Of a stretch of DNA of 64,000 nucleotides, positions 327 to 51,476 are shown one piece after another. Each line of letters opens with the position of its first letter. Position 1 is the first letter of the stretch. The position numbers and the translations under genes are program-made. The notes beneath the pieces were generated by a model, which saw only the letters and a program-made list of their open reading frames with translations, was not told the origin of the DNA and made no database searches. The stretch is taken from IMG/VR virus record IMGVR_UViG_3300030616_000016, positions 62,001 through 126,000 of that record. One strand, written 5' to 3'.

Positions 327-1502
327 TTATAATTTACCGGTCATAAATTTTATTGCTTTGCCAAATGAATCAACCTTATTAAGTTCAATTACATTGGCTA
401 CTTGGAACTCATTCCTGCCTTGTTTAGTTTTATTAGTACGTATACGTCCTCTAACAAGACATGTCTTGTTTGCTTCGCCAAGTTCTTCAAGTGTTTTCTT
501 CAAAGATTTCTCTGCTTTTTTATATGAAACAACTGGAGCTATGCTATGTCCATCTTCCATATAAAGAATACGCCTCTTTGATTCTTCAACTATGAATAAC
601 TGGCAGGCAACGGTTACGAACATCCAATGTTGCAATCTGCTATCTTCGCCCATAGCTACTCTAGATGCATCAGATAAAGTTTTAATATCACAATCCTTTA
701 TCCTCTCAAGTCTTTCTTTGTTGTCATCTAGAAATGGTGCGCTTTCAGATAGACTGAAACCAAGATGATAAAGCTCTTCTTTATGATACACATTTTTATC
801 CATAGGTTCACAGTCTAACATTTCTATATTAAATACTTCGTTCTTCTTTTCTTCGTCATTCAGAGTCTTGCGTTTCATTATCTTGTTAGACTCTTTTTTT
901 ATGTTCTCAATATTAATGACAATCCAATTTCTATTTGGCTTACCATCTTCTGTAGTTTCAGCTATTGGATCAAAGAATCCAATCTTTGCCAAAGCATATA
1001 AGGCTGATGTATATATGGTTTTATAATTATTAATATAAGCCCATATAAACTCTGTTAGACTGTCGAATGGTCCATACTTTTTAACCAGTTCTTCAATAGC
1101 TGAGGCAGCATTGCTATTCACATAGCGTATACCATCCATGCCTACTCTTATGCCGTACCCATTCTCTAATGGCTGGCATATTTGTGAGCATCCTTCTATA
1201 CTTGGCGGTCTAACTTCAAGCCCAGCAGATGTCGCTTCTTCAATATATTTACTGACAGTAGATTTGTTGTTGGACCTGGCATTAATCATTGCGCTTATGT
1301 ATTCTTCAAGATATAAGCATTTTAGGTATGCAGTCTTATAGGTAAGATAGGCATAGCTTACACTATGTGAGTTTTTTGATATAAGACCACTAGATAAGAT
1401 ATAATTATGGGGCTCGTTTTCCATTCTAATATTATATAGTCTACGCTTACCTAGTTTTCTTATCTTATTTATCTTTACTTTCTTCAATTGCAAGTTTTGC
1501 AC
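327..1502 (-). CDS. dnaE: DNA polymerase III alpha, C-terminal half, preceded by split-intein C-fragment (IntC about 1371-1487; likely TTG start at 1487)
   Basis: KKVKINKIRKLGKRRLYNIRMENEPHNYILSSGLISKN|SHSVSYAYLTYKTAYLK: intein blocks F/G ending in Asn with +1 Ser, followed by DnaE SH..Y..YLK, EY.SAM and HhH motifs. Confidence 0.93.
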   Translation of the reverse strand: MQNLQLKKVKINKIRKLGKRRLYNIRMENEPHNYILSSGLISKNSHSVSYAYLTYKTAYLKCLYLEEYISAMINARSNNKSTVSKYIEEATSAGLEVRPPSIEGCSQICQPLENGYGIRVGMDGIRYVNSNAASAIEELVKKYGPFDSLTEFIWAYINNYKTIYTSALYALAKIGFFDPIAETTEDGKPNRNWIVINIENIKKESNKIMKRKTLNDEEKKNEVFNIEMLDCEPMDKNVYHKEELYHLGFSLSESAPFLDDNKERLERIKDCDIKTLSDASRVAMGEDSRLQHWMFVTVACQLFIVEESKRRILYMEDGHSIAPVVSYKKAEKSLKKTLEELGEANKTCLVRGRIRTNKTKQGRNEFQVANVIELNKVDSFGKAIKFMTGKL

Positions 1503-2334
1503 GATTGAATTTTCTCCTCATACAAAATTCAGCATTATTATACATGAGTCTTAGCACTTTTGTTAAATCCCTTTCTATATACCACTCTATATAATATAAA
1601 ATACCTCTTTGCTGTGAGGGTATTTTATAATCTATATCTAGTATATGGAATAGCATATATGATATTTGTGATACAACAGATTTCGTTCCTAGAAATCTTA
1701 TGCACCATTTTTTATTAACGCTATTTCTATATAGAGTTCCATCACCATCAAAAAATCCTCTTAGCATATGTCCAAATAAATCTATTTTTATAGGAGGTAA
1801 TACTGCATCATTTGTTTTATCACTTGTAAAACCAAATCTGTAAAGATCTTCAACCATTTTTGGAGATGCTACTGTAATTCTGGACATTGGTTTTACATTG
1901 ACTTCTCTGCCTGCTATTATCTTTTTACCTCCAGGTATTTCTATTATCTTGTTATCAGTTTTCCATTGTTTTTTAACATAGTTGATTATATATCTGTCGC
2001 TCTTGCTAAGAGATAGGGATATTGAATTGTCTTTTTCTACTAACCATCCGTCGGCCAATAGCAATCCAATTACATATGCCTTGTGTTGGTTATCTATTTT
2101 GCTAAAGTAGAAATGATCAACACTATTATATTCCCACTTCTCTCTTGCTCTTATGCCAAATCTATGTAAAAGATCGTAGATAGTTTTAGTAGTCTTGAAC
2201 TTAAAGTTCAAGCTTTTAAGTATCTCGCTACCAGATTTCCCTTTGGTATAGAGTTCTATAATCTTTTTCTCATCTTCTAATGTCATTTTCTTATTTGGCG
2301 GATTTTTTGGTTTGTAGACCATATAATACTCCAA
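1465..2334 (-). CDS. Free-standing LAGLIDADG homing endonuclease with N-terminal HTH-like region
   Basis: Two LAGLIDADG-like motifs, YVIGLLLADGW and MLRGFFDGDG; lies between the two dnaE halves. Confidence 0.88.
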   Translation of the reverse strand: MEYYMVYKPKNPPNKKMTLEDEKKIIELYTKGKSGSEILKSLNFKFKTTKTIYDLLHRFGIRAREKWEYNSVDHFYFSKIDNQHKAYVIGLLLADGWLVEKDNSISLSLSKSDRYIINYVKKQWKTDNKIIEIPGGKKIIAGREVNVKPMSRITVASPKMVEDLYRFGFTSDKTNDAVLPPIKIDLFGHMLRGFFDGDGTLYRNSVNKKWCIRFLGTKSVVSQISYMLFHILDIDYKIPSQQRGILYYIEWYIERDLTKVLRLMYNNAEFCMRRKFNRAKLAIEESKDK

Positions 2335-30405: not shown

Positions 30406-30459
30406 TGAATTTCCTTTCTGAGAGAGTGACATTACCCCACGCCTAAAGGCGGGGGCTTC

Positions 30460-31626
30460 CTAATTCATCGAAAATTGCGTTCCATACTGGCTACGTCTTA
30501 CATCTTCTCCAAAGGCTTTAGGTTCCCCTTGCCCAGGGGTACAAAATGCAAAATTCAAAATATTACTAGATGCAAGGGCATCTCTATCGTGTTTGGCACC
30601 ACAAGTGCAAGTCCAATATCTGTCACTTAGCTTAAGATTATTATTTATAGCGCCGCACTGGTTACACATCTTGCTGGATGGTTCAAATCTTCCTATAGTC
30701 AAAACATGCTTTCCATACCAACCTGCCTTATACTCAAGAAAGGTACGAAAAGTATACCATCCAACATCAGAGATAGCCTTGGCCAAACAATGATTCTTCA
30801 CCATTCCAGAAACGTTTAAATCCTCAAGACACACTGCTTGGTTCTCGTCAATGAGCCTTTTGGACAATTTATGCAAAAAATCTTTACGTTGATTAGAAAT
30901 CTTCTCATGTATCAACGCTACCTTCCTACGAGCCTTGTTTCTATTTGAAGAACCTTTCTTCTTCTTTGATAATTGTTTTTGCTTTCTTGCCAATCTTCTT
31001 TCAAGTTTCTTTAGGTATCTTGGATTATCTATTTTCTCGCCTGTTGATAGTGTTGCAAAATGTTTTAATCCAACGTCAACACCTACACTATTATCTCGTT
31101 CAGGATTACATTTGATAGGTAATTCTTCTCCATTGTCAACCAAAATAGAAGCAAAGTATTTCCCAGAAGGAGCCATGAATATAGTTACAGTTTTAATATT
31201 GCCTTCAAATTGTCTATGGAATTTGCATTTGATGCCATCACGGAATTTCATTACATATAGCCTATTATTATCAAAATCCACATTACTTCCTTGTGGAAAT
31301 TGACAAGATTGCTTTTTGAATTTCTTCTTAAATTGAGGATATCTTGCCTGTTTCTTAAAAAACCGCCGGAAAGCATTGTCAAGGTTTCTAAAGGCCATTT
31401 GCAAAGATTGACTATTAACTTCCTTCAGCCAACCATGCTCAGATTTCATATGTTTCAATTGCTTTATCAAATCAAAACAGGAAGGAGATTTCCCCGTTTT
31501 TTGATAAGACTCTGTTTTCTTTTGGAGTCCCAAATTGTATATGAACCGTACACAACCAAAATGCTTCACAAGAAGCTCCTGTTGTTTTTTGTTGGGGTAT
31601 ATTTTGTATTTATATGCTCGTATCAT
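30460..31626 (-). CDS. tnpB: TnpB RNA-guided endonuclease, apparently intact
   Basis: MIRAYKYKIYP HTH; RuvC motifs GVDVGLK, LEDL, DRDALAS; CNQCG/CTCG zinc ribbon. Confidence 0.95.
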   Translation of the reverse strand: MIRAYKYKIYPNKKQQELLVKHFGCVRFIYNLGLQKKTESYQKTGKSPSCFDLIKQLKHMKSEHGWLKEVNSQSLQMAFRNLDNAFRRFFKKQARYPQFKKKFKKQSCQFPQGSNVDFDNNRLYVMKFRDGIKCKFHRQFEGNIKTVTIFMAPSGKYFASILVDNGEELPIKCNPERDNSVGVDVGLKHFATLSTGEKIDNPRYLKKLERRLARKQKQLSKKKKGSSNRNKARRKVALIHEKISNQRKDFLHKLSKRLIDENQAVCLEDLNVSGMVKNHCLAKAISDVGWYTFRTFLEYKAGWYGKHVLTIGRFEPSSKMCNQCGAINNNLKLSDRYWTCTCGAKHDRDALASSNILNFAFCTPGQGEPKAFGEDVRRSQYGTQFSMN

Positions 31627-31635
31627 TATATTTAT

Positions 31636-31664
31636 AGTATAGCACAGGTTTCTGTAAATGTCAA
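31636..31664 (-). promoter_or_regulatory. sigma70 promoter in the IS left end driving tnpB
   Basis: TTGACA-17 nt-TATACT. Confidence 0.75.
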
Positions 31665-31732
31665 GAGAAAAACGCATTCTTATATCCCCATGGCTAAAGC
31701 CAGGGGTCTTACGAATGCACCTTGATAAAAGA

Positions 31733-31761
31733 GCAGGAGGAAGGTATCCTCTTCCCCCTGC
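31733..31761 (-). terminator. Rho-independent terminator closing the non-coding tract
   Basis: Minus strand GCAGGGGGAAG-7 nt-CTTCCTCCTGC followed by TCTTTT. Confidence 0.7.
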
Positions 31762-31875
31762 CAGGTTTCATTATCAAAAGCTCCAGCTGCTTTCAATTAT
31801 CAGTTGAACGCTGGAATTCAATGAAATGTTGCATTTATGTTGTCTACGGCGCTATAGCCAATTTTTAGATCTAAG

Positions 31876-31958
31876 TACCTGCGACCTGCCATTAGTCCAA
31901 GGACACATAAGGAATAAAATGGAGTGTCCTGAGGGACTTGAACCCTCAACTCAGGCAT
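31876..31958 (-). ncRNA. Circularly permuted tRNA-like module 2 (3' half with CCA, linker, then 5' half)
   Basis: CCTG-AGTT-GAGGG TTCAAGT CCCTC-AGGACAC-T-CCA-linker-GTGTCCT-TG-GAC TAATGGCAG GTC-G-CAGG; acceptor, T, D and anticodon stems all pair. Confidence 0.8.
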
Positions 31959-32050
31959 AGTTAATATTGGCGTTCGAGAAGACAACGCAACAAATGCTGA
32001 GCTTTCAGGGAATAGTCTGAATTTAGCGTGCTTTCATATTATCACCAGCT

Positions 32051-32120
32051 TTCGCCGCGTATGCCAGTTCCGCCATCTTCCCATATAGTGGGAAGAGCAG
32101 GGTTCGAACCTGCACGGTGA
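32051..32120 (-). ncRNA. Circularly permuted tRNA-like module 1
   Basis: GCAGG TTCGAAC CCTGC-TCTTCCC-actatat-GGGAAGA-TG-GCG GAACTGGCATA CGC; 7-bp acceptor stem closed by a loop. Confidence 0.8.
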
Positions 32121-32168
32121 AGGAAAGTACTTATTTCAGCTTAACCTTAAGCTTCAGCTTGCCCTGTA

Positions 32169-32906
32169 TTATCCGAAAATGAAGTTACAGATGTCCTTGC
32201 CGATTTCTTTGCGTTCAACAGACGTGTTGTTTGCTTCTTCTCGTGCAAACTTGACTGCTCTCATAAGAACAGCAATTTTGTCAAGCATTTCTTTCTTACG
32301 AGTTGCAGAAATACATGTACTGAGCTTTGTAGTAGTCCAGTAACCGATAATCTCATCGCTGACTACAAGCTGAGTCTGTGCAGGATGCTTTTCAGTAGCA
32401 GCATAAAGAACGATAGGTTTCTCAACCTTACGTGTTTTATGTGTCTGACGCGCGCCTGATTTGAACATTCCGGAATCTTCATCACGAGCCCATGTTTCTG
32501 CTGGATCCAGTTCAGGAAGTTTCTCGACATATGTTTTAATATCGTTCAGCTGTTTTTCGAGGTACAGCAAGAATGTGGGAGGGGCGTCTTTTACAATTAC
32601 TGTGTCGCCAACCTTAATATCTGCTTTTGCAATGGTATTGCCAAAGTCTTTAGTTGCAGTAACATCAAACAGATCTGCGAGAGATTCCGCTACTTCGTTA
32701 ATTACATTGTTCAGATTTTCTTGTACCTTTACTGATTCTTCTGGAAAGTTCTCACCTTCTTCGTCTTTAGGCTCATATACTTTATGAAGGCCATTGAATA
32801 TTTGTGGTGCATCTGACAAACGATGAGCCTGAGTAATGATAGAATTATGGCGGGATTTTTCGCCCTTCTCAACTGCAATAATCTGATTAAGTTTAACTTC
32901 AGACAT
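32169..32906 (-). CDS. Conserved helical/coiled-coil protein immediately upstream of the tRNA-like RNA
   Basis: KLNQIIAVEKG N-terminus, P.TFLLYLEKQL, V..AREEAN; GGAGG RBS; function unknown. Confidence 0.8.
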   Translation of the reverse strand: MSEVKLNQIIAVEKGEKSRHNSIITQAHRLSDAPQIFNGLHKVYEPKDEEGENFPEESVKVQENLNNVINEVAESLADLFDVTATKDFGNTIAKADIKVGDTVIVKDAPPTFLLYLEKQLNDIKTYVEKLPELDPAETWARDEDSGMFKSGARQTHKTRKVEKPIVLYAATEKHPAQTQLVVSDEIIGYWTTTKLSTCISATRKKEMLDKIAVLMRAVKFAREEANNTSVERKEIGKDICNFIFG

Positions 32907-42000: not shown

Positions 42001-42196
42001 GCTGAACCTTTCCTCTCTATTAATTTGTTTTAACCAAAAATTCACCAAACAACACAACTTGCTTATTAAATGATAATTAGATAGTTACTTAGATAATCAA
42101 ATTATTTGATAGATCGGTAACATATCTCAATTATGCAATTTTTTGGTAATATATGTATATCACTGTGCCTTAAAATGAGTACCTATTATCGTTTAT

Positions 42197-42443
42197 CAAG
42201 GTGCATTCGTAAGACCCCTGGCTTTAGCCATGGGGATATAAGAATGCGTTTTTCTCTTGACATTTACAGAAATCTGTGCTATACTTTTGCTAATGATCGA
42301 AAACCAAGATCATTGGCAAAGAATTTAGATACCGCAGGGCATGCGGAAATTTACGCCTTTGGAGAAGATGTAAGACTTGTCTGCTTGAAAGCAGTCTTCA
42401 GTGAATTAGGAAGCCCCCGCCTTTAGGCGTGGGGTAATGTCAC
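42197..42443 (+). mobile_element. 247-bp non-autonomous derivative of the IS200/IS605 element retaining both ends, the promoter and an omegaRNA-like scaffold
   Basis: The left end (caaggtgcattcg...ttgaca-17 nt-tatact) is nearly identical and the right end (gaattaggaagcccccgcc...taatgtcac) identical to 30426-31724; preceded by TTTAT. Confidence 0.92.
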
Positions 42444-42447
42444 CTGA

Positions 42448-44118
42448 TTAGTTTATAAGGCAAAACAGATACTTCTGAATTCTGTCACTGCCTGTTGCAT
42501 ATTCGTCTATCAGGCGATATAAGAGCTTGTCCCAGCCTTTAGATAGCATCAACTGCATTACAGTGATGTATATCCTTGTTCCAGACCTCTTACCACTATT
42601 TGCATATATTCCATCATCAGATAGCTTACGACTGCATGCATGAGTATTTGTCTGGTGGCTGAACTTATCTAATACTATCCAGAACACTTTCCCAGACCAT
42701 GCCTCAACTGTCTGTCCGTTATAAGTATGCTTTTGTGGCTTGCATTCTTTTATAAGAGCAGATGGTATATTCCCATCTTCTCCTTCTAGAAAGTGAGGAA
42801 CGGGCGCCGGCCCTGATTCCTCTGCAATATTATTAAGCATAGCTTCTACTATCTGACCTGGATTCCTACGCTTTAGAGTTGCAAGAGCGTTGGTTACCAC
42901 TTCTGCTGGTTTGCCATCTATCTTAGGCATTTGCTCGTCTGGTATAATATTTACTATACCTTTATTACCGTGACGATTTGTAATTTTGTCGCCACTTCTG
43001 AGAATATGAAATCTCTCGTATTCGACAATAAGTTTTGTACAAACTGTGTTTGCTACTTTTGTTCTTATCTCACTGATATTAGACAGTTTAGCTTCACGCT
43101 TGACATGACATTTAAGCGTGATTGTTTCTTCTCCATCAGAATAAGAACCAATTATCTGATTTGGTCTTACAATGTCTCCGGCTTTGGCTTCCATCTTTAG
43201 GCTTTGTTTGCACCATCCTGGTACTACGAATGTCTGTTTCTCAGGAATGACACATGTCATTTTTCTAGCTGCTGACTTACTCATAACAATCTGTTCTTTG
43301 TATACACCAGGCATGATTGCATGAACTGTAAGTAAGTGCTTGCCATTAAGATTGTTATCATAATCTTCTGGAAACACCATAGGTTTATCTGGACTAACTA
43401 GCTTGCTGGAAGCCTTGAAATTAGATGCAGTGGTTCTGCGGCGATTATATTCTGGTACAATAAGATTCTTATTGAGTATATCGCAATAAACCCGACCTCT
43501 TTTGGTGAAGCATCCAATATCGTTTATTTTGCATTCTTCAGCCATGTACATTGTGCGACCACAATTCCCCGATGACTGACTTATACTTGTCCAATCAAGA
43601 ATGCCTTCTGTATTGAATGGCATAAATTCATCCGTTCGTTCTTGAAATAGCTCTAATGATATTTTGGGTCCATAGTGAGTAGCTATTCCCTTTACGACAT
43701 GAGATAATCTTGAAGTTTTAAGTAAATTATCGAGCTTCATTTGAGCTGTGGTAGAATCTTCTTGATGTCCGAACATAAAGAAGTCTGACAGTTGTGTAGC
43801 ATATGCTTGCTTAATGAATTTAAGAAGAAGCTCGTATGGTGTTGATAAATATGTGTGATTAATATTCATACATCTGTTATTAAAGATTGGCATTGGATTA
43901 AGTGTATAGCATAATTGCCGGCTTATTCCATTTACAGAAAACATACCCTTGTTATCAATCTTAGGTATATTTAGTTTTACGACTGTTTGCATGCTCTGGG
44001 ATGCCTCTTTAACAAGCATTTTTGTATGAAATAGGTCATCATATTCTTCTATATGACAGTCAACAGGCAAACAATTACATATAGGAAACAATCTTGCAAG
44101 ATGAGACTTATTCATCAT
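42448..44118 (-). CDS. Compact RNA polymerase beta-like subunit
   Basis: GMFSVNG; GDKITNRHGNKGIV...MP...G.PAEVV.N...RRNPGQIVE matches the RpoB GDK..RHGNKG block. Confidence 0.88.
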   Translation of the reverse strand: MMNKSHLARLFPICNCLPVDCHIEEYDDLFHTKMLVKEASQSMQTVVKLNIPKIDNKGMFSVNGISRQLCYTLNPMPIFNNRCMNINHTYLSTPYELLLKFIKQAYATQLSDFFMFGHQEDSTTAQMKLDNLLKTSRLSHVVKGIATHYGPKISLELFQERTDEFMPFNTEGILDWTSISQSSGNCGRTMYMAEECKINDIGCFTKRGRVYCDILNKNLIVPEYNRRRTTASNFKASSKLVSPDKPMVFPEDYDNNLNGKHLLTVHAIMPGVYKEQIVMSKSAARKMTCVIPEKQTFVVPGWCKQSLKMEAKAGDIVRPNQIIGSYSDGEETITLKCHVKREAKLSNISEIRTKVANTVCTKLIVEYERFHILRSGDKITNRHGNKGIVNIIPDEQMPKIDGKPAEVVTNALATLKRRNPGQIVEAMLNNIAEESGPAPVPHFLEGEDGNIPSALIKECKPQKHTYNGQTVEAWSGKVFWIVLDKFSHQTNTHACSRKLSDDGIYANSGKRSGTRIYITVMQLMLSKGWDKLLYRLIDEYATGSDRIQKYLFCLIN

Positions 44119-49174: not shown

Positions 49175-49534
49175 AATTCATTCTATACATATGGTATATT
49201 TATTCTTCGTGATTCATTCGTTTGGCATGGTATTTCAATTTGCTTGATTCGCTAATGAGTAGTGGTGTTTCAATATTTTTGGCTCATTTTAATACTTTGT
49301 TCTATTCTTTCATATGATTCATTCCTTGGTCCTGGTATTTTAGGGCTGATGGCTCATTCAGTACAATTGGTATTTTCGTGTTCATAATTCATTCTTGTTG
49401 TTTGGTATTTCCACCAAGATGACTCATTCTAATAAAGTGGTTGTTCAAATAAAGTGATTCATTCTTCCACGTTGATGTATTCAATTGCATAGTTCATTCT
49501 TTTCTTGTGATATTTCGTGTAGATTGATTCATTC
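49175..49534 (-). repeat. TIGR-like dual-repeat array 1: 10 units, 35-nt period (one of 36 nt)
   Basis: Plus-strand motif GATTCATTC-like at 49175, 49211, 49246, 49281, 49316, 49351, 49386, 49421, 49456, 49491 and 49526, with a GGTATTTY-like motif 18 nt after each; the intervening segments (9 nt, one of 10) are all different. Confidence 0.92.
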
Positions 49535-50170
49535 ATGAAAACTATGATATTCACTCCAGAATAACTTTTCTCTGTAATCCTTACATGCTTTCATGTATTC
49601 TTCTAAAGTCTGTAGAAATGATTTCTGTTCTTTTCTATTGTATGTTATAGGCATAGGAGGAAATCTTTTTATATATTCCTCTTGCTTTTTCTTTTGTATC
49701 TTCTTACGCCTATTTTTTCTTGCAAGTTTTCTTCTTGCTTTCATGCGTTGTGTTTTATTAAGTTGTACAATTTCACTTGTAATTGTTCTTCTATGAATAA
49801 TCCACGATTTCCTAAGTTCTTGTTTAAATTCCTTAAAGAAATCCCATTCTTCTATAGCTCTGATTTTTCTTTTGAGACGCCTTCTTATTTTAATCCTTGA
49901 TTTTCTAATGTGATTAAGTGTGAATATTTTACTACTTATATCTTTGGGCTCATGTTTATCGAATCCTGGTATCCAGTTATATTCACACCATAGGGTAAGA
50001 TCTTTTGTAATTTGTTGAACATGCTCGTAATCTGGTTTTACATAATATGTTCTATATTCTGGAAGATAATGATTGTTTCTTTGTTCTTCAACGAGTTTGT
50101 TTGCTACAATAATTACGCAGCCTTTTAGTGATTTTATTAGATGTTCTCTAACAGATTTTGTTCGATTCAT
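49529..50170 (-). CDS. Highly basic hypothetical protein whose stop codon lies in the first repeat of array 1
   Basis: 213 aa, K/R-rich; TTT CAT GAA TGA overlaps GAATGAATC. Confidence 0.6.
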   Translation of the reverse strand: MNRTKSVREHLIKSLKGCVIIVANKLVEEQRNNHYLPEYRTYYVKPDYEHVQQITKDLTLWCEYNWIPGFDKHEPKDISSKIFTLNHIRKSRIKIRRRLKRKIRAIEEWDFFKEFKQELRKSWIIHRRTITSEIVQLNKTQRMKARRKLARKNRRKKIQKKKQEEYIKRFPPMPITYNRKEQKSFLQTLEEYMKACKDYREKLFWSEYHSFHE

Positions 50171-50197
50171 TTAGTTTATCCTTATATACAATATGCT

Positions 50198-50590
50198 TTA
50201 GAACAAAAACCTTACGTTTGGATACTCCTTGAGACATTCAAGACCGGGTTTGATTACTTCCTGGAAGATATTATATCTGTTAGCTAGCCCGCCACCTAAT
50301 CTGCTAATTAAGAAGATATAATCATCATATTCTTCTATTCTTCTCTCTAGCTTGGCTAGTTCTGTTTGGAATTTAGGCTTATATTCTTCTGGCTTATAAA
50401 AGCTACCGTCATTGTTATTAGGCGCCTTCTTTGTTACGAATCCATATGTATTTGGCATATCACGCAGCTTAGCAGCTCCGCCATATCCCTTATGTAATAG
50501 ATTGTCGCCAAATACAAATATTTCATATCTATGTCTCTTTAAATAGGCCCTTGTTATTTTTGTCTCACCGCCGCTTCTATTAGATTCCAT
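50198..50590 (-). CDS. Phage protein with FVFGDN...GGAA motif (A1S_2505-like, possible macrodomain-related fold)
   Basis: IFVFGDNLLHKGYGGAAKLR...YGFVTK. Confidence 0.5.
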   Translation of the reverse strand: MESNRSGGETKITRAYLKRHRYEIFVFGDNLLHKGYGGAAKLRDMPNTYGFVTKKAPNNNDGSFYKPEEYKPKFQTELAKLERRIEEYDDYIFLISRLGGGLANRYNIFQEVIKPGLECLKEYPNVRFLF

Positions 50591-50890: not shown

Positions 50891-51476
50891 GGTGTTTTCC
50901 TTTTTGTGATTCATTCATTATAACTGATGTTTCTATAAGTGTGATTCATTCTTTAATAATGGTAATTTAATGGCTTTGATTCATTTTTCCCCAATGGTAT
51001 TTCTTATGTAATTATTCATTCTTTATACTTGATATTGTGACTACATTGATTCATTTGTATGGACTGGTATTTCATATTTAGTGATTCACTCACTTATTTT
51101 GGTATTTCCATGGGTGTGGTTCATTCCGGCATGATGGTACTTCTAGGCAATTAATTCATTCTTATAGTCTGGTACATTGTCCTATCTGATTCATTCCTTC
51201 TTTATGGTATTTCGTGACTGATAATTCATTCTGTTCAGCTGGTATTTTGGAGCTTATGATTCGTTCGCAATTAATGGTACTTTCTGATTTATAACTCATT
51301 TTCTCCGAATGGTATTTCAGATTGAGTGATTCATTTGTTCATGTTGAATTATTGTGCAAAGTGATTCATTCTCGCGACATGGTATTTTGGGGCTAATGAT
51401 TCATTCATAATATATGATATTTTTTGGATAATGATTCGTTCATGTTGCATGGTAATTCTAGGACGCTGACTCGCTC
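50891..51476 (-). repeat. TIGR-like dual-repeat array 2: about 17 units with an exact 35-nt period
   Basis: GATTCATTC-like motif at 50908 and every 35 nt up to 51468 (17 copies); GGTATTTY-like motif at 50891 and every 35 nt up to 51451; unique 9-nt segments between. Confidence 0.95.

What the first reader, a model, noticed from the sequence alone, without database searches (positions are those of the whole stretch)
42197..42463. Miniature IS200/IS605 derivative that looks like a stand-alone omegaRNA gene
Seen: 247 bp with the same ends and TTGACA-17-TATACT promoter as the tnpB element, sharing gcctttggagaagatgtaagac and the right-end hairpin but with a different internal stem (agacttgtctgcttgaaagcagtct). 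Both elements follow TTTAT. The flank after TCAC gives a different guide (CTGATTAGTTTATAAGGCAA versus TCTCTCAGAAAGGAAATTCA). Established: TnpB omegaRNA spans the right end plus flank and targets TAM plus the empty site. Inference: the intact TnpB can be reprogrammed in trans to cut rival phage alleles lacking the mini-element next to the RNAP gene.
Basis: partly seen in the sequence, partly recalled or inferred. Interest (0 to 1): 0.6.

Follow-up and report, generated by a model that had tools for sequence, protein, structure and literature searches.

The report
Mini transposon carrying a guide-RNA gene
A 247-bp gene-less derivative of a TnpB transposon in a 232-kb phage keeps both transposon ends, a promoter and an intact guide-RNA scaffold, so it probably gives the phage's single TnpB nuclease a second guide; such elements are already known in bacteria, so this is a clean new example, not a new principle.

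Summary
Window 42197-42443 (+) is a 247-bp, ORF-less IS200/IS605-type element. Its left end (89 nt, 99%) and last 42 nt (100%) match the only tnpB element of this 231,647-bp phage genome (window 30426-31724, minus strand).

I built a covariance model from 15 tnpB-linked right ends of relatives, without the mini. It scores the mini at 74.3 bits over its full length, against 77.2 bits for the resident tnpB copy and 13 bits for the next hit. All covariation-supported helices are kept, and stem 1 carries two compensatory pair changes. The left-end sigma-70-type promoter now sits about 35 nt before the scaffold.

It is therefore a PATE-type mini-element that amounts to a promoter plus omegaRNA cassette. 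Its guide would be the 20 nt at 42444-42463, which cover the last codons and stop of an RNA polymerase beta-like gene.

Use of this RNA in trans by the resident TnpB is plausible but untested. No RNA data exist, no empty-site allele was found, and no TnpA is encoded by the phage.

PATEs that encode omegaRNAs needing TnpB in trans were already described (PMC10055086). New here are the phage setting, the mosaic make-up of the mini, and tnpB-less scaffolds in about 10 of 45 related viral records.

The parts
42192..42196 (+). TTTAT, putative transposon-adjacent motif (TAM) directly 5' of the mini's left end
   Evidence: The three insertions in this genome follow TTTAT, TTTAT and CTTAT, with no target duplication.
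42197..42443 (+). Mini-element (PATE-type, 247 bp, no gene)
   Evidence: Its ends match the tnpB element. No tnpB ORF is present; only an 11-codon vestige starting at the ATG at 42293 remains.
42197..42285 (+). Left end; imperfect subterminal hairpin at 42215-42235
   Evidence: It is 98.9% identical over 89 nt to the left end of the tnpB copy, and the hairpin motif was located.
42257..42285 (+). Sigma-70-type promoter TTGACA-17-TATACT inside the left end, pointing at the scaffold
   Evidence: The promoter scan scores it 11 of 12 with a TG. The same promoter precedes tnpB in the full copy and in relatives L005, L006 and L142.
42286..42319 (+). Leader with the vestigial tnpB start region; this is the deletion junction
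   Evidence: Similarity to the first codons of the resident tnpB runs to about 42299. After that the sequence is unique to the mini.
42320..42443 (+). omegaRNA scaffold
   Evidence: It scores 74.3 bits (E 3e-21) over model positions 1-110 of R1, which was built without it. It keeps 16 of 16 positions that are at least 90% conserved in the family.
42332..42346 (+). Scaffold stem 1 (CCGCA / TGCGG)
   Evidence: All five pairs are kept, and two pairs are changed on both sides relative to the resident copy. The helix covaries across 71 relatives.
42381..42394 (+). Variable hairpin (5 bp, 4-nt loop) that replaces the one in the tnpB copy
   Evidence: RNA folds and the alignment show this.
42414..42434 (+). 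Right-end imperfect hairpin; the element ends in GTCAC at 42443
   Evidence: It is identical to the resident copy. The helix covaries across the family.
42444..42463 (+). Putative 20-nt guide, transcribed from the right flank
   Evidence: Assigned by position only. It overlaps the stop codon (42448-42450) and the last four codons of the RNA polymerase gene. Its only match in the genome is this site, which is preceded by the right end and not by a TAM.
42448..44118 (-). RNA polymerase beta-like gene (556 aa) whose 3' end is the guide's target region
   Evidence: Pfam RNA_pol_Rpb2_6; PHROG RNA polymerase beta subunit.
30426..31724 (-). Full-length tnpB element (1299 bp), the presumed source of the protein
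   Evidence: Its ends were defined by comparison with the mini and micro copies.
30460..31626 (-). tnpB coding sequence (388 aa)
   Evidence: It has the Pfam domains HTH_OrfB_IS605, OrfB_IS605 and Cas12f1-like_TNB. It matches ISDra2 TnpB structures at E 3e-67 over residues 3-378, and the acidic RuvC motifs are aligned.
30426..30551 (-). omegaRNA scaffold of the full copy; its putative guide is 30406-30425
   Evidence: It scores 77.2 bits with R1.

Best explanation
The 247-bp element is a non-autonomous PATE-type derivative of an IS200/IS605 (tnpB-only) transposon. An internal deletion removed nearly the whole tnpB gene. What remains is the left end with its promoter, joined to the complete omegaRNA scaffold and the right end.

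Inferred mechanism:
- The left-end promoter starts transcription near 42292.
- The transcript carries the scaffold (42320-43443 end at 42443) and runs on into the flank, giving a guide from 42444.
- The TnpB made by the full copy 10.5 kb away binds this RNA in trans.
- The complex cuts only DNA in which TTTAT is joined directly to the right flank. That junction is the unoccupied site, which arises after excision by a host TnpA or exists in a co-infecting genome that lacks the insert.
- Recombination with an occupied phage genome copy then restores or spreads the element, together with the neighbouring RNA polymerase gene end.

Shown here: the anatomy, the intact scaffold, the retained promoter, an intact TnpB, and the absence of any self-target. 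Inferred: transcription, loading by TnpB, cleavage and homing.
For: - The ends and promoter are shared with the tnpB copy.
- The scaffold model R1, built without the mini, scores the mini at 74.3 bits. The resident copy scores 77.2 bits. Nothing else in the window scores above 13.3 bits and nothing else in the 232-kb genome above 15.9 bits.
- The model's helices are backed by covariation: 90% of cells paired, with 0 of 500 shuffles reaching that value, in 15 sequences; 93% in 71 distinct sequences.
- The mini keeps stem 1 through two double-sided changes. It keeps the G-C closing pair and the right-end hairpin. It keeps 16 of 16 and 20 of 21 conserved positions, the same as the resident copy.
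- Its linker variant resembles that of L006, the tnpB-linked scaffold of a 79%-identical TnpB.
- TnpB is full length and homologous to ISDra2 TnpB, with RuvC motifs present.
- Each guide matches only its own occupied flank.
- Relatives of the RNA polymerase gene have only 57-bp or 9-bp spacers at this place, so the mini is an insertion.
- PMC10055086 states that PATEs often encode omegaRNAs that need TnpB in trans.
Against: - There is no expression evidence: no RNA run holds the locus.
- No terminator follows the guide.
- The scaffold interior is only about 75% identical to the resident one, so compatibility with this TnpB is assumed, not shown.
- No TnpA is encoded in the phage, and no empty-site allele was seen. 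The situation in which the guide would act has therefore not been observed.
- The phage has its own RNA polymerase genes, so use of a sigma-70-type promoter during infection is uncertain.
Confidence: 0.6

Rival explanations
1. Inert relic. The mini is a dead deletion derivative that persists only because it is harmless or is occasionally moved by a host TnpA. Its RNA, if made, has no role.
For: tnpB-less scaffold fragments are common in related viral records, and most lack a left end, as decay products would. A 48-bp derivative with no scaffold also sits in this genome. No expression data exist.
Against: The interior has diverged by about 25% from the resident copy. Yet every covarying helix and all 16 highly conserved positions are intact, and two stem pairs are changed on both sides. 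The promoter differs by a single spacer base. Neutral decay of that depth should have broken some pairs.
Confidence: 0.2
2. Regulatory by-product. The main effect is on the neighbouring genes. The outward promoter would make an RNA antisense to the 3' end of the RNA polymerase gene. On the other strand, the GC-rich right-end hairpin 4 nt after the stop codon would act as a stabiliser or terminator for that mRNA.
For: The mini is oriented against both flanking genes and abuts the stop codon. No terminator stops its transcript.
Against: The terminator scan finds no site on either strand. This reading does not explain why the whole scaffold is conserved. Relatives manage with a plain short spacer at this place.
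Confidence: 0.1
3. Inter-phage gene drive or weapon. The guide mainly serves to cut co-infecting relatives that lack the insert. This converts them, or excludes their RNA polymerase-linked markers, as free-standing homing endonucleases do in T-even phages.
For: None of six related viral records, including this one, encodes the TnpA transposase. Homing between genomes is therefore a plausible route of spread in phages. The target lies in the conserved end of an essential gene. Strain variants of the phage coexist in run X2.
Against: No allele without the mini was found in either run or in IMG/VR. The nearest known relatives differ at most guide positions. Three TAM-adjacent precise insertions show that TnpA-type transposition, not homing alone, placed the copies.
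Confidence: 0.3

Closest known systems
PATE-like minimal IS200/IS605 elements of Geobacillus stearothermophilus (Meers et al. 2023, PMC10055086)
   Same: Both are gene-less elements bounded by the left and right ends of resident TnpB or IscB transposons. The paper states that many encode omegaRNAs that must be used in trans by a TnpB encoded elsewhere.
   Different: This one lies in a 232-kb phage genome with no TnpA. Only one TnpB and one mini are present. The left-end promoter sits directly in front of the scaffold. The interior is a mosaic relative to the resident copy.
ISDra2 TnpB and its omegaRNA (PDB 8exa, 8h1j, 8bf8)
   Same: The protein is homologous at E 3e-67 over almost its whole length. 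The guide RNA scaffold overlaps the 3' end of tnpB and the right end, with the guide taken from the flank. That architecture is established knowledge, which I recall from Karvelis et al. 2021.
   Different: The TAM inferred here is TTTAT or TTAT. From memory, ISDra2 uses TTGAT. The scaffold sequence was not compared directly with that of ISDra2.
IS608 of Helicobacter pylori (model for TnpA-driven single-strand transposition)
   Same: Both have imperfect subterminal hairpins at the two ends, insert 3' of a short motif without target duplication, and have a right end finishing in a TCA-type motif. The IS608 details are from memory and from PMC10055086.
   Different: No tnpA is present here. The rules by which TnpA recognises the cleavage sites were not tested.
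Orphan mini-CRISPR arrays or solitary repeat units in phages (from memory, not checked here)
   Same: Both would be a guide-RNA gene separated from its effector gene on a mobile genome and acting in trans.
   Different: The guide here is fixed by the insertion site and is not acquired as a spacer. The effector is encoded by the same phage.

Membership tests
IS200/IS605 non-autonomous element (PATE/MITE type) | Left and right ends with imperfect subterminal hairpins, shared with a full-length family member | tested here: met
   The left end matches 88 of 89 nt and the right end 42 of 42 nt of the resident tnpB element. The hairpins lie at 42215-42235 and 42414-42434.
IS200/IS605 non-autonomous element (PATE/MITE type) | No protein-coding gene inside | tested here: met
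   Only an 11-codon vestige of tnpB remains. The listed 97-aa frame 42133-42426 starts outside the element and runs through the left end; it was not scanned against any protein library.
IS200/IS605 non-autonomous element (PATE/MITE type) | Insertion 3' of a conserved short motif, with no target-site duplication | tested here: met
   The three copies follow TTTAT, TTTAT and CTTAT, and their flanks are not duplicated.
IS200/IS605 non-autonomous element (PATE/MITE type) | A Y1 TnpA able to mobilise it | tested here: not met
   PF01797 has no match in the 231,647-bp genome, while the control genomes do match. A host-encoded TnpA cannot be checked because the host is unknown.
TnpB omegaRNA | Scaffold homologous in sequence and structure to tnpB-linked right ends of the family | tested here: met
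   74.3 bits over the full model; the model was built without the mini. One caveat: the model includes the resident copy, whose last 42 nt are identical to the mini's.
TnpB omegaRNA | Base pairs of the scaffold kept, with covariation | tested here: met
   The family helices are supported by covariation. The mini forms the same pairs as the resident copy and has two double-sided changes in stem 1.
TnpB omegaRNA | A cognate TnpB with an intact nuclease in the same genome | tested here: met
   There is a 388-aa TnpB with three Pfam domains, homologous to ISDra2 TnpB, with acidic RuvC motifs aligned. The residues were read from an alignment, not assayed.
TnpB omegaRNA | Transcribed, with a 3' guide taken from the flank, and bound by TnpB | not testable with these tools
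   No RNA run holds the locus. A promoter is predicted only.
TnpB omegaRNA | A target (TAM plus guide match) that exists only at the empty site | tested here: met
   In the whole genome the guide matches only its own flank, which is preceded by the right end and not by a TAM. The TAM itself is inferred from three insertions.
Rfam RNA families | Match at the gathering score | tested here: not met
   There are no hits at gathering score. The mini has sub-threshold hits only: RAGATH-18 at 21.2 bits and HPnc0580 at 20.4 bits. The full copy does not repeat them.

The most novel reading that the evidence does not exclude
Huge phages that carry a TnpA-less tnpB element may routinely keep extra, separately transcribed omegaRNA genes. 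One nuclease would then serve several fixed guides: a multi-guide homing or marker-exclusion system acting between co-infecting phage genomes, and a natural intermediate between a one-guide transposon nuclease and an effector with an array of guides. The evidence that leaves this open:
- This phage has one tnpB plus the mini.
- A 394-kb complete phage has a tnpB-less scaffold behind its own TTGACA-16-TAAAAT promoter.
- tnpB-less scaffolds occur in about 10 of 45 related viral records.
Probability: 0.2. Interest if true: 0.75.

Novelty: new member of a known kind. Interest (0 to 1): 0.42.

Why it matters
The element is a compact natural case in which guide and nuclease are encoded apart on a virus. 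The parts are small enough to test directly: one 388-aa TnpB, two guide cassettes and a TTTAT motif.

If the mini's RNA is loaded, a phage-borne TnpB would be shown to serve more than one guide. TnpB elements would also be shown to behave in phages like homing endonuclease genes placed next to essential genes. That bears on two questions: how TnpA-less tnpB copies persist in viruses, and how multi-guide systems could arise from transposon nucleases.

If the RNA is not loaded, the mini is an ordinary transposon relic.

Tried and rejected
- blastn of the mini against 50,697 phage records found no match.
- An exact scan of IMG/VR for the right-end terminus found none.
- Relatives of the RNA polymerase protein were not found in IMG/VR by pattern search. 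The word-based protein search found three, at 66-51% identity.
- Empty-site junction patterns for the mini and for the full copy have no match in IMG/VR.
- Sequencing runs: only two marine-sediment DNA runs, kept as contigs, hold the locus, and no RNA run does. Laying them showed low-depth fragments that cross the left junction (X2) and the right junction (X1) with the mini in place. No contig skips 42197-42443, but at this depth that is not evidence of absence.
- Rfam gave nothing at gathering score. I do not rely on the weak RAGATH-18 and HPnc0580 hits, because the full copy lacks them.
- I considered that the GC-rich 445 nt upstream of the full copy might be a group I intron, which would make it an IStron. 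Rfam gives only a 17-bit tRNA-like hit there, and the left end is clearly at 31724, so I dropped this.
- A left end for the tnpB-less scaffold of contig G001 could not be found.
I left the scan out. I re-ran the script with sequences taken by coordinate.
- The large representative protein search, structure prediction and complex prediction were not used. The protein family is clear, and the open question concerns an RNA.

Full report
**Setting.** The window is bases 62001-126000 of a single 231,647-bp virus record (38% G+C, CheckV completeness 95%). Two marine-sediment metagenome runs hold the locus. The window encodes a DNA polymerase, helicases and split RNA polymerase beta-like proteins, as in other very large phages.

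- Window 42197-42443 (+) is a 247-bp element. Its first 89 nt are 98.9% identical, and its last 42 nt 100% identical, to the ends of a 1299-bp element on the minus strand at 30426-31724.
- That larger element carries the only tnpB gene of the genome.
- The shared 22-nt block is found twice, against none in 100 shuffles.
- Both copies follow TTTAT and end in GTCAC, with unrelated right flanks and no target duplication.
- The left end holds a TTGACA-17-TATACT promoter with a TG before the -10. Relatives of the element have the same arrangement in front of tnpB.
It is 48 bp long: left-end nt 1-31 joined within the hairpin loop to the last 23 nt of the right end, placed after CTTAT.
- Three precise insertions next to a TTAT-type motif are the signature of Y1-transposase (TnpA) transposition. 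Yet the phage has no TnpA gene, while the same search finds TnpA in control genomes.

**The protein.** The tnpB product is 388 aa. It has the three Pfam domains typical of IS605 OrfB/TnpB. It matches the solved ISDra2 TnpB structures at E 3e-67 over residues 3-378, with the acidic RuvC motifs and the zinc-finger cysteines aligned. Its closest relatives are metagenomic: 87% identity on a 2.9-kb contig and 79% on a 38-kb viral contig. The best match in 185,579 prokaryote genomes is only 55% (Methanosarcina). The host and the source of the element therefore remain unknown.

**Is the mini a complete guide-RNA scaffold?**
- I aligned the 3' ends of 15 tnpB-linked elements, from the resident copy down to about 50% protein identity, without the mini.
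- Four helices are supported by covariation: a 5-bp stem 1, a long-range 4-bp helix, a closing pair of the variable arm, and the right-end hairpin. 90% of cells are paired. No shuffle out of 500 reaches the observed values, and slid controls drop to 40-50%.
- A covariance model of this alignment was searched without filters (for the build, for the search). It scores the resident copy at 77.2 bits and the mini at 74.3 bits, both over the whole model. The next hit in the window has 13 bits, and the whole genome has no further copy.
- Realigning 74 matches from relatives confirms the structure: 93% paired in 71 distinct rows.
- In that alignment the mini forms the same pairs as the resident copy. 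In stem 1 it reads CCGCA/TGCGG where the tnpB-linked copies read CCCCT/AGGGG, so two pairs are changed on both sides.
- In the tnpB-linked copies this stem also encodes the TnpB tail, so its sequence is held by coding. The tnpB-less copies are free of that constraint yet stay paired.
- The mini keeps 16 of 16 positions conserved in at least 90% of relatives, and 20 of 21 at the 80% level, exactly as the resident copy does.
- By inspection of the four closest sequences, the helix enclosing the variable arm is also kept through one-sided changes on its 3' strand. The inner hairpin is replaced by a different 5-bp stem with a 4-nt loop.

**How it was made.** Similarity to the resident copy continues past the promoter into the first codons of tnpB, to about 42299. 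It resumes about 10 nt before stem 1. The mini is thus an internal deletion that removed almost the entire gene and brought the promoter to within about 35 nt of the scaffold.

It is not a recent deletion of the resident copy, however. The interior (42286-42401) is only about 75% identical to the resident copy and about 80% identical to the two scaffolds of the 38-kb viral contig, while the ends are 99-100% identical to the resident copy. I cannot explain this mosaic with the data at hand. Exchange between copies at the ends, or descent from a different family member followed by homogenisation of the ends, are both possible.

**Target logic.** The putative guide (42444-42463) covers 4 nt of spacer, the stop codon and the last four codons of a 556-aa RNA polymerase beta-like gene. 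In the whole genome each guide matches only its own flank. That flank is preceded by the right end and not by a TAM, so occupied sites are immune and only an unoccupied junction would be a target. Relatives of the polymerase gene (66% and 53% identity) have spacers of 57 and 9 bp at this position and no element. This shows that the mini is an insertion, but these relatives are too diverged to be cut by this guide.

**What could not be shown.** No RNA run holds the locus. The two DNA runs are low-depth contig sets. They cross both junctions with the mini in place and show no contig that skips it, which at this depth proves little. The empty-site junctions are absent from IMG/VR. Transcription, loading by TnpB and cleavage therefore remain inferences from the anatomy and from published work on the family.

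**Comparison with what is known.** Meers et al. (PMC10055086) found PATE-like minimal elements with the ends of resident TnpB/IscB transposons in Geobacillus stearothermophilus. They state that such elements often encode omegaRNAs that must be acted on in trans by TnpB encoded elsewhere. A PATE with IStron ends is also described. TnpB genes in phages, including very large ones, have been reported. The mini is therefore a new member of a known kind. It meets the tested defining features of a PATE and of an omegaRNA scaffold. The features not met or not testable are a TnpA partner, which is absent from the phage, and expression.

**Recurrence in other viral records.** I ran the model and the protein over 44 further viral records that carry a family TnpB; with this phage that makes 45.
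- About ten of the 45, counting this phage, hold at least one scaffold match with no tnpB beside it. The count is approximate: weak matches of 26-31 bits are included, and matches at contig ends are left out.
- Those I inspected are mostly right-end fragments without a left end.
- One, in a complete 394-kb phage, sits about 27 nt behind a TTGACA-16-TAAAAT promoter. It is about 75% identical to the 3' end of that phage's second tnpB, which lies 130 kb away.
- None of the six viral records tested for TnpA, this phage included, encodes it.

This pattern leaves room for the more interesting reading that TnpA-less tnpB elements in phages live as RNA-guided homing elements with extra guide genes. 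It is equally what decay of transposon copies would leave behind.

**Verdict.** The structural interpretation is supported. The trans-acting, anti-rival function is plausible but untested. I give 0.9 that this is a PATE with an intact omegaRNA scaffold, about 0.6 that its RNA is made and used by the resident TnpB to guard or spread its own insertion site, and about 0.3 that competition between co-infecting phages is its main arena.

Noticed in passing
L004 1501-1548 (genome 133294-133341, + strand; outside the window): A 48-bp third copy: left-end nt 1-31 fused within the hairpin loop to the last 23 nt of the right end, inserted after CTTAT. It has both termini but no scaffold or promoter. Contigs of run X1 also carry it.
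   Followed up: partly
window 42286-42401 compared with 30468-30551: Mosaic identity. The mini's ends are 99-100% identical to the resident tnpB copy. Its interior is only about 75% identical, and slightly closer (about 80%) to the scaffolds of another viral contig. This is unexplained.
   Followed up: partly
L246 1501-1624 (-), viral contig G001 19183-19306: A second scaffold without tnpB (82 bits) lies 14 kb from the tnpB element of a 38-kb viral contig whose TnpB is 79% identical to this one. Stem 1 is again changed on both sides (CCGTA/TACGG). No left end was found.
   Followed up: partly
L251 about 1501-1690 (-), viral record G002 135586-135708: In a complete 394-kb phage, a tnpB-less scaffold (28.6 bits) sits about 27 nt behind a TTGACA-16-TAAAAT promoter. 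It is about 75% identical to the 3' end of that phage's second tnpB (L250).
   Followed up: partly
L256 545-792, L257, L259 (viral records G037 and G022): Further tnpB-less copies occur in other viral contigs. One is a 248-nt fragment 98.8% identical to the 3' end of the resident tnpB element; another is a 122-nt fragment at 95%. Neither has a left end.
   Followed up: partly
window 49315-49534 and 50907-51476: Two arrays of a roughly 35-bp-period repeat: 13 copies of a 45-nt unit, each bounded by a TGATTCATTC-like word. They lie in non-coding stretches on either side of the genes at 49529-50590. They could be iterons or a promoter array.
   Followed up: no
window 31725-32168 (-): A 445-nt non-coding stretch, G+C-rich for this genome, lies directly upstream of the tnpB element. 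It has tRNA-like arms (Rfam tRNA at 17 bits, 32089-32163), but ARAGORN calls no tRNA anywhere in the window.
   Followed up: partly
window 42208-42242 joined to 42410-42434, in run X2: One contig in the second sediment run joins left-end and right-end parts of the element, skipping 167 nt, and sits in different flanks. This suggests another short (about 80-bp) derivative elsewhere in that community.
   Followed up: no
window 32169-32906 (-) and L254 11228-11635: A DUF7873 protein (E 8e-90) is encoded next to the tnpB insertion site. A homologue lies in the related contig that also carries the RNA polymerase relative.
   Followed up: no
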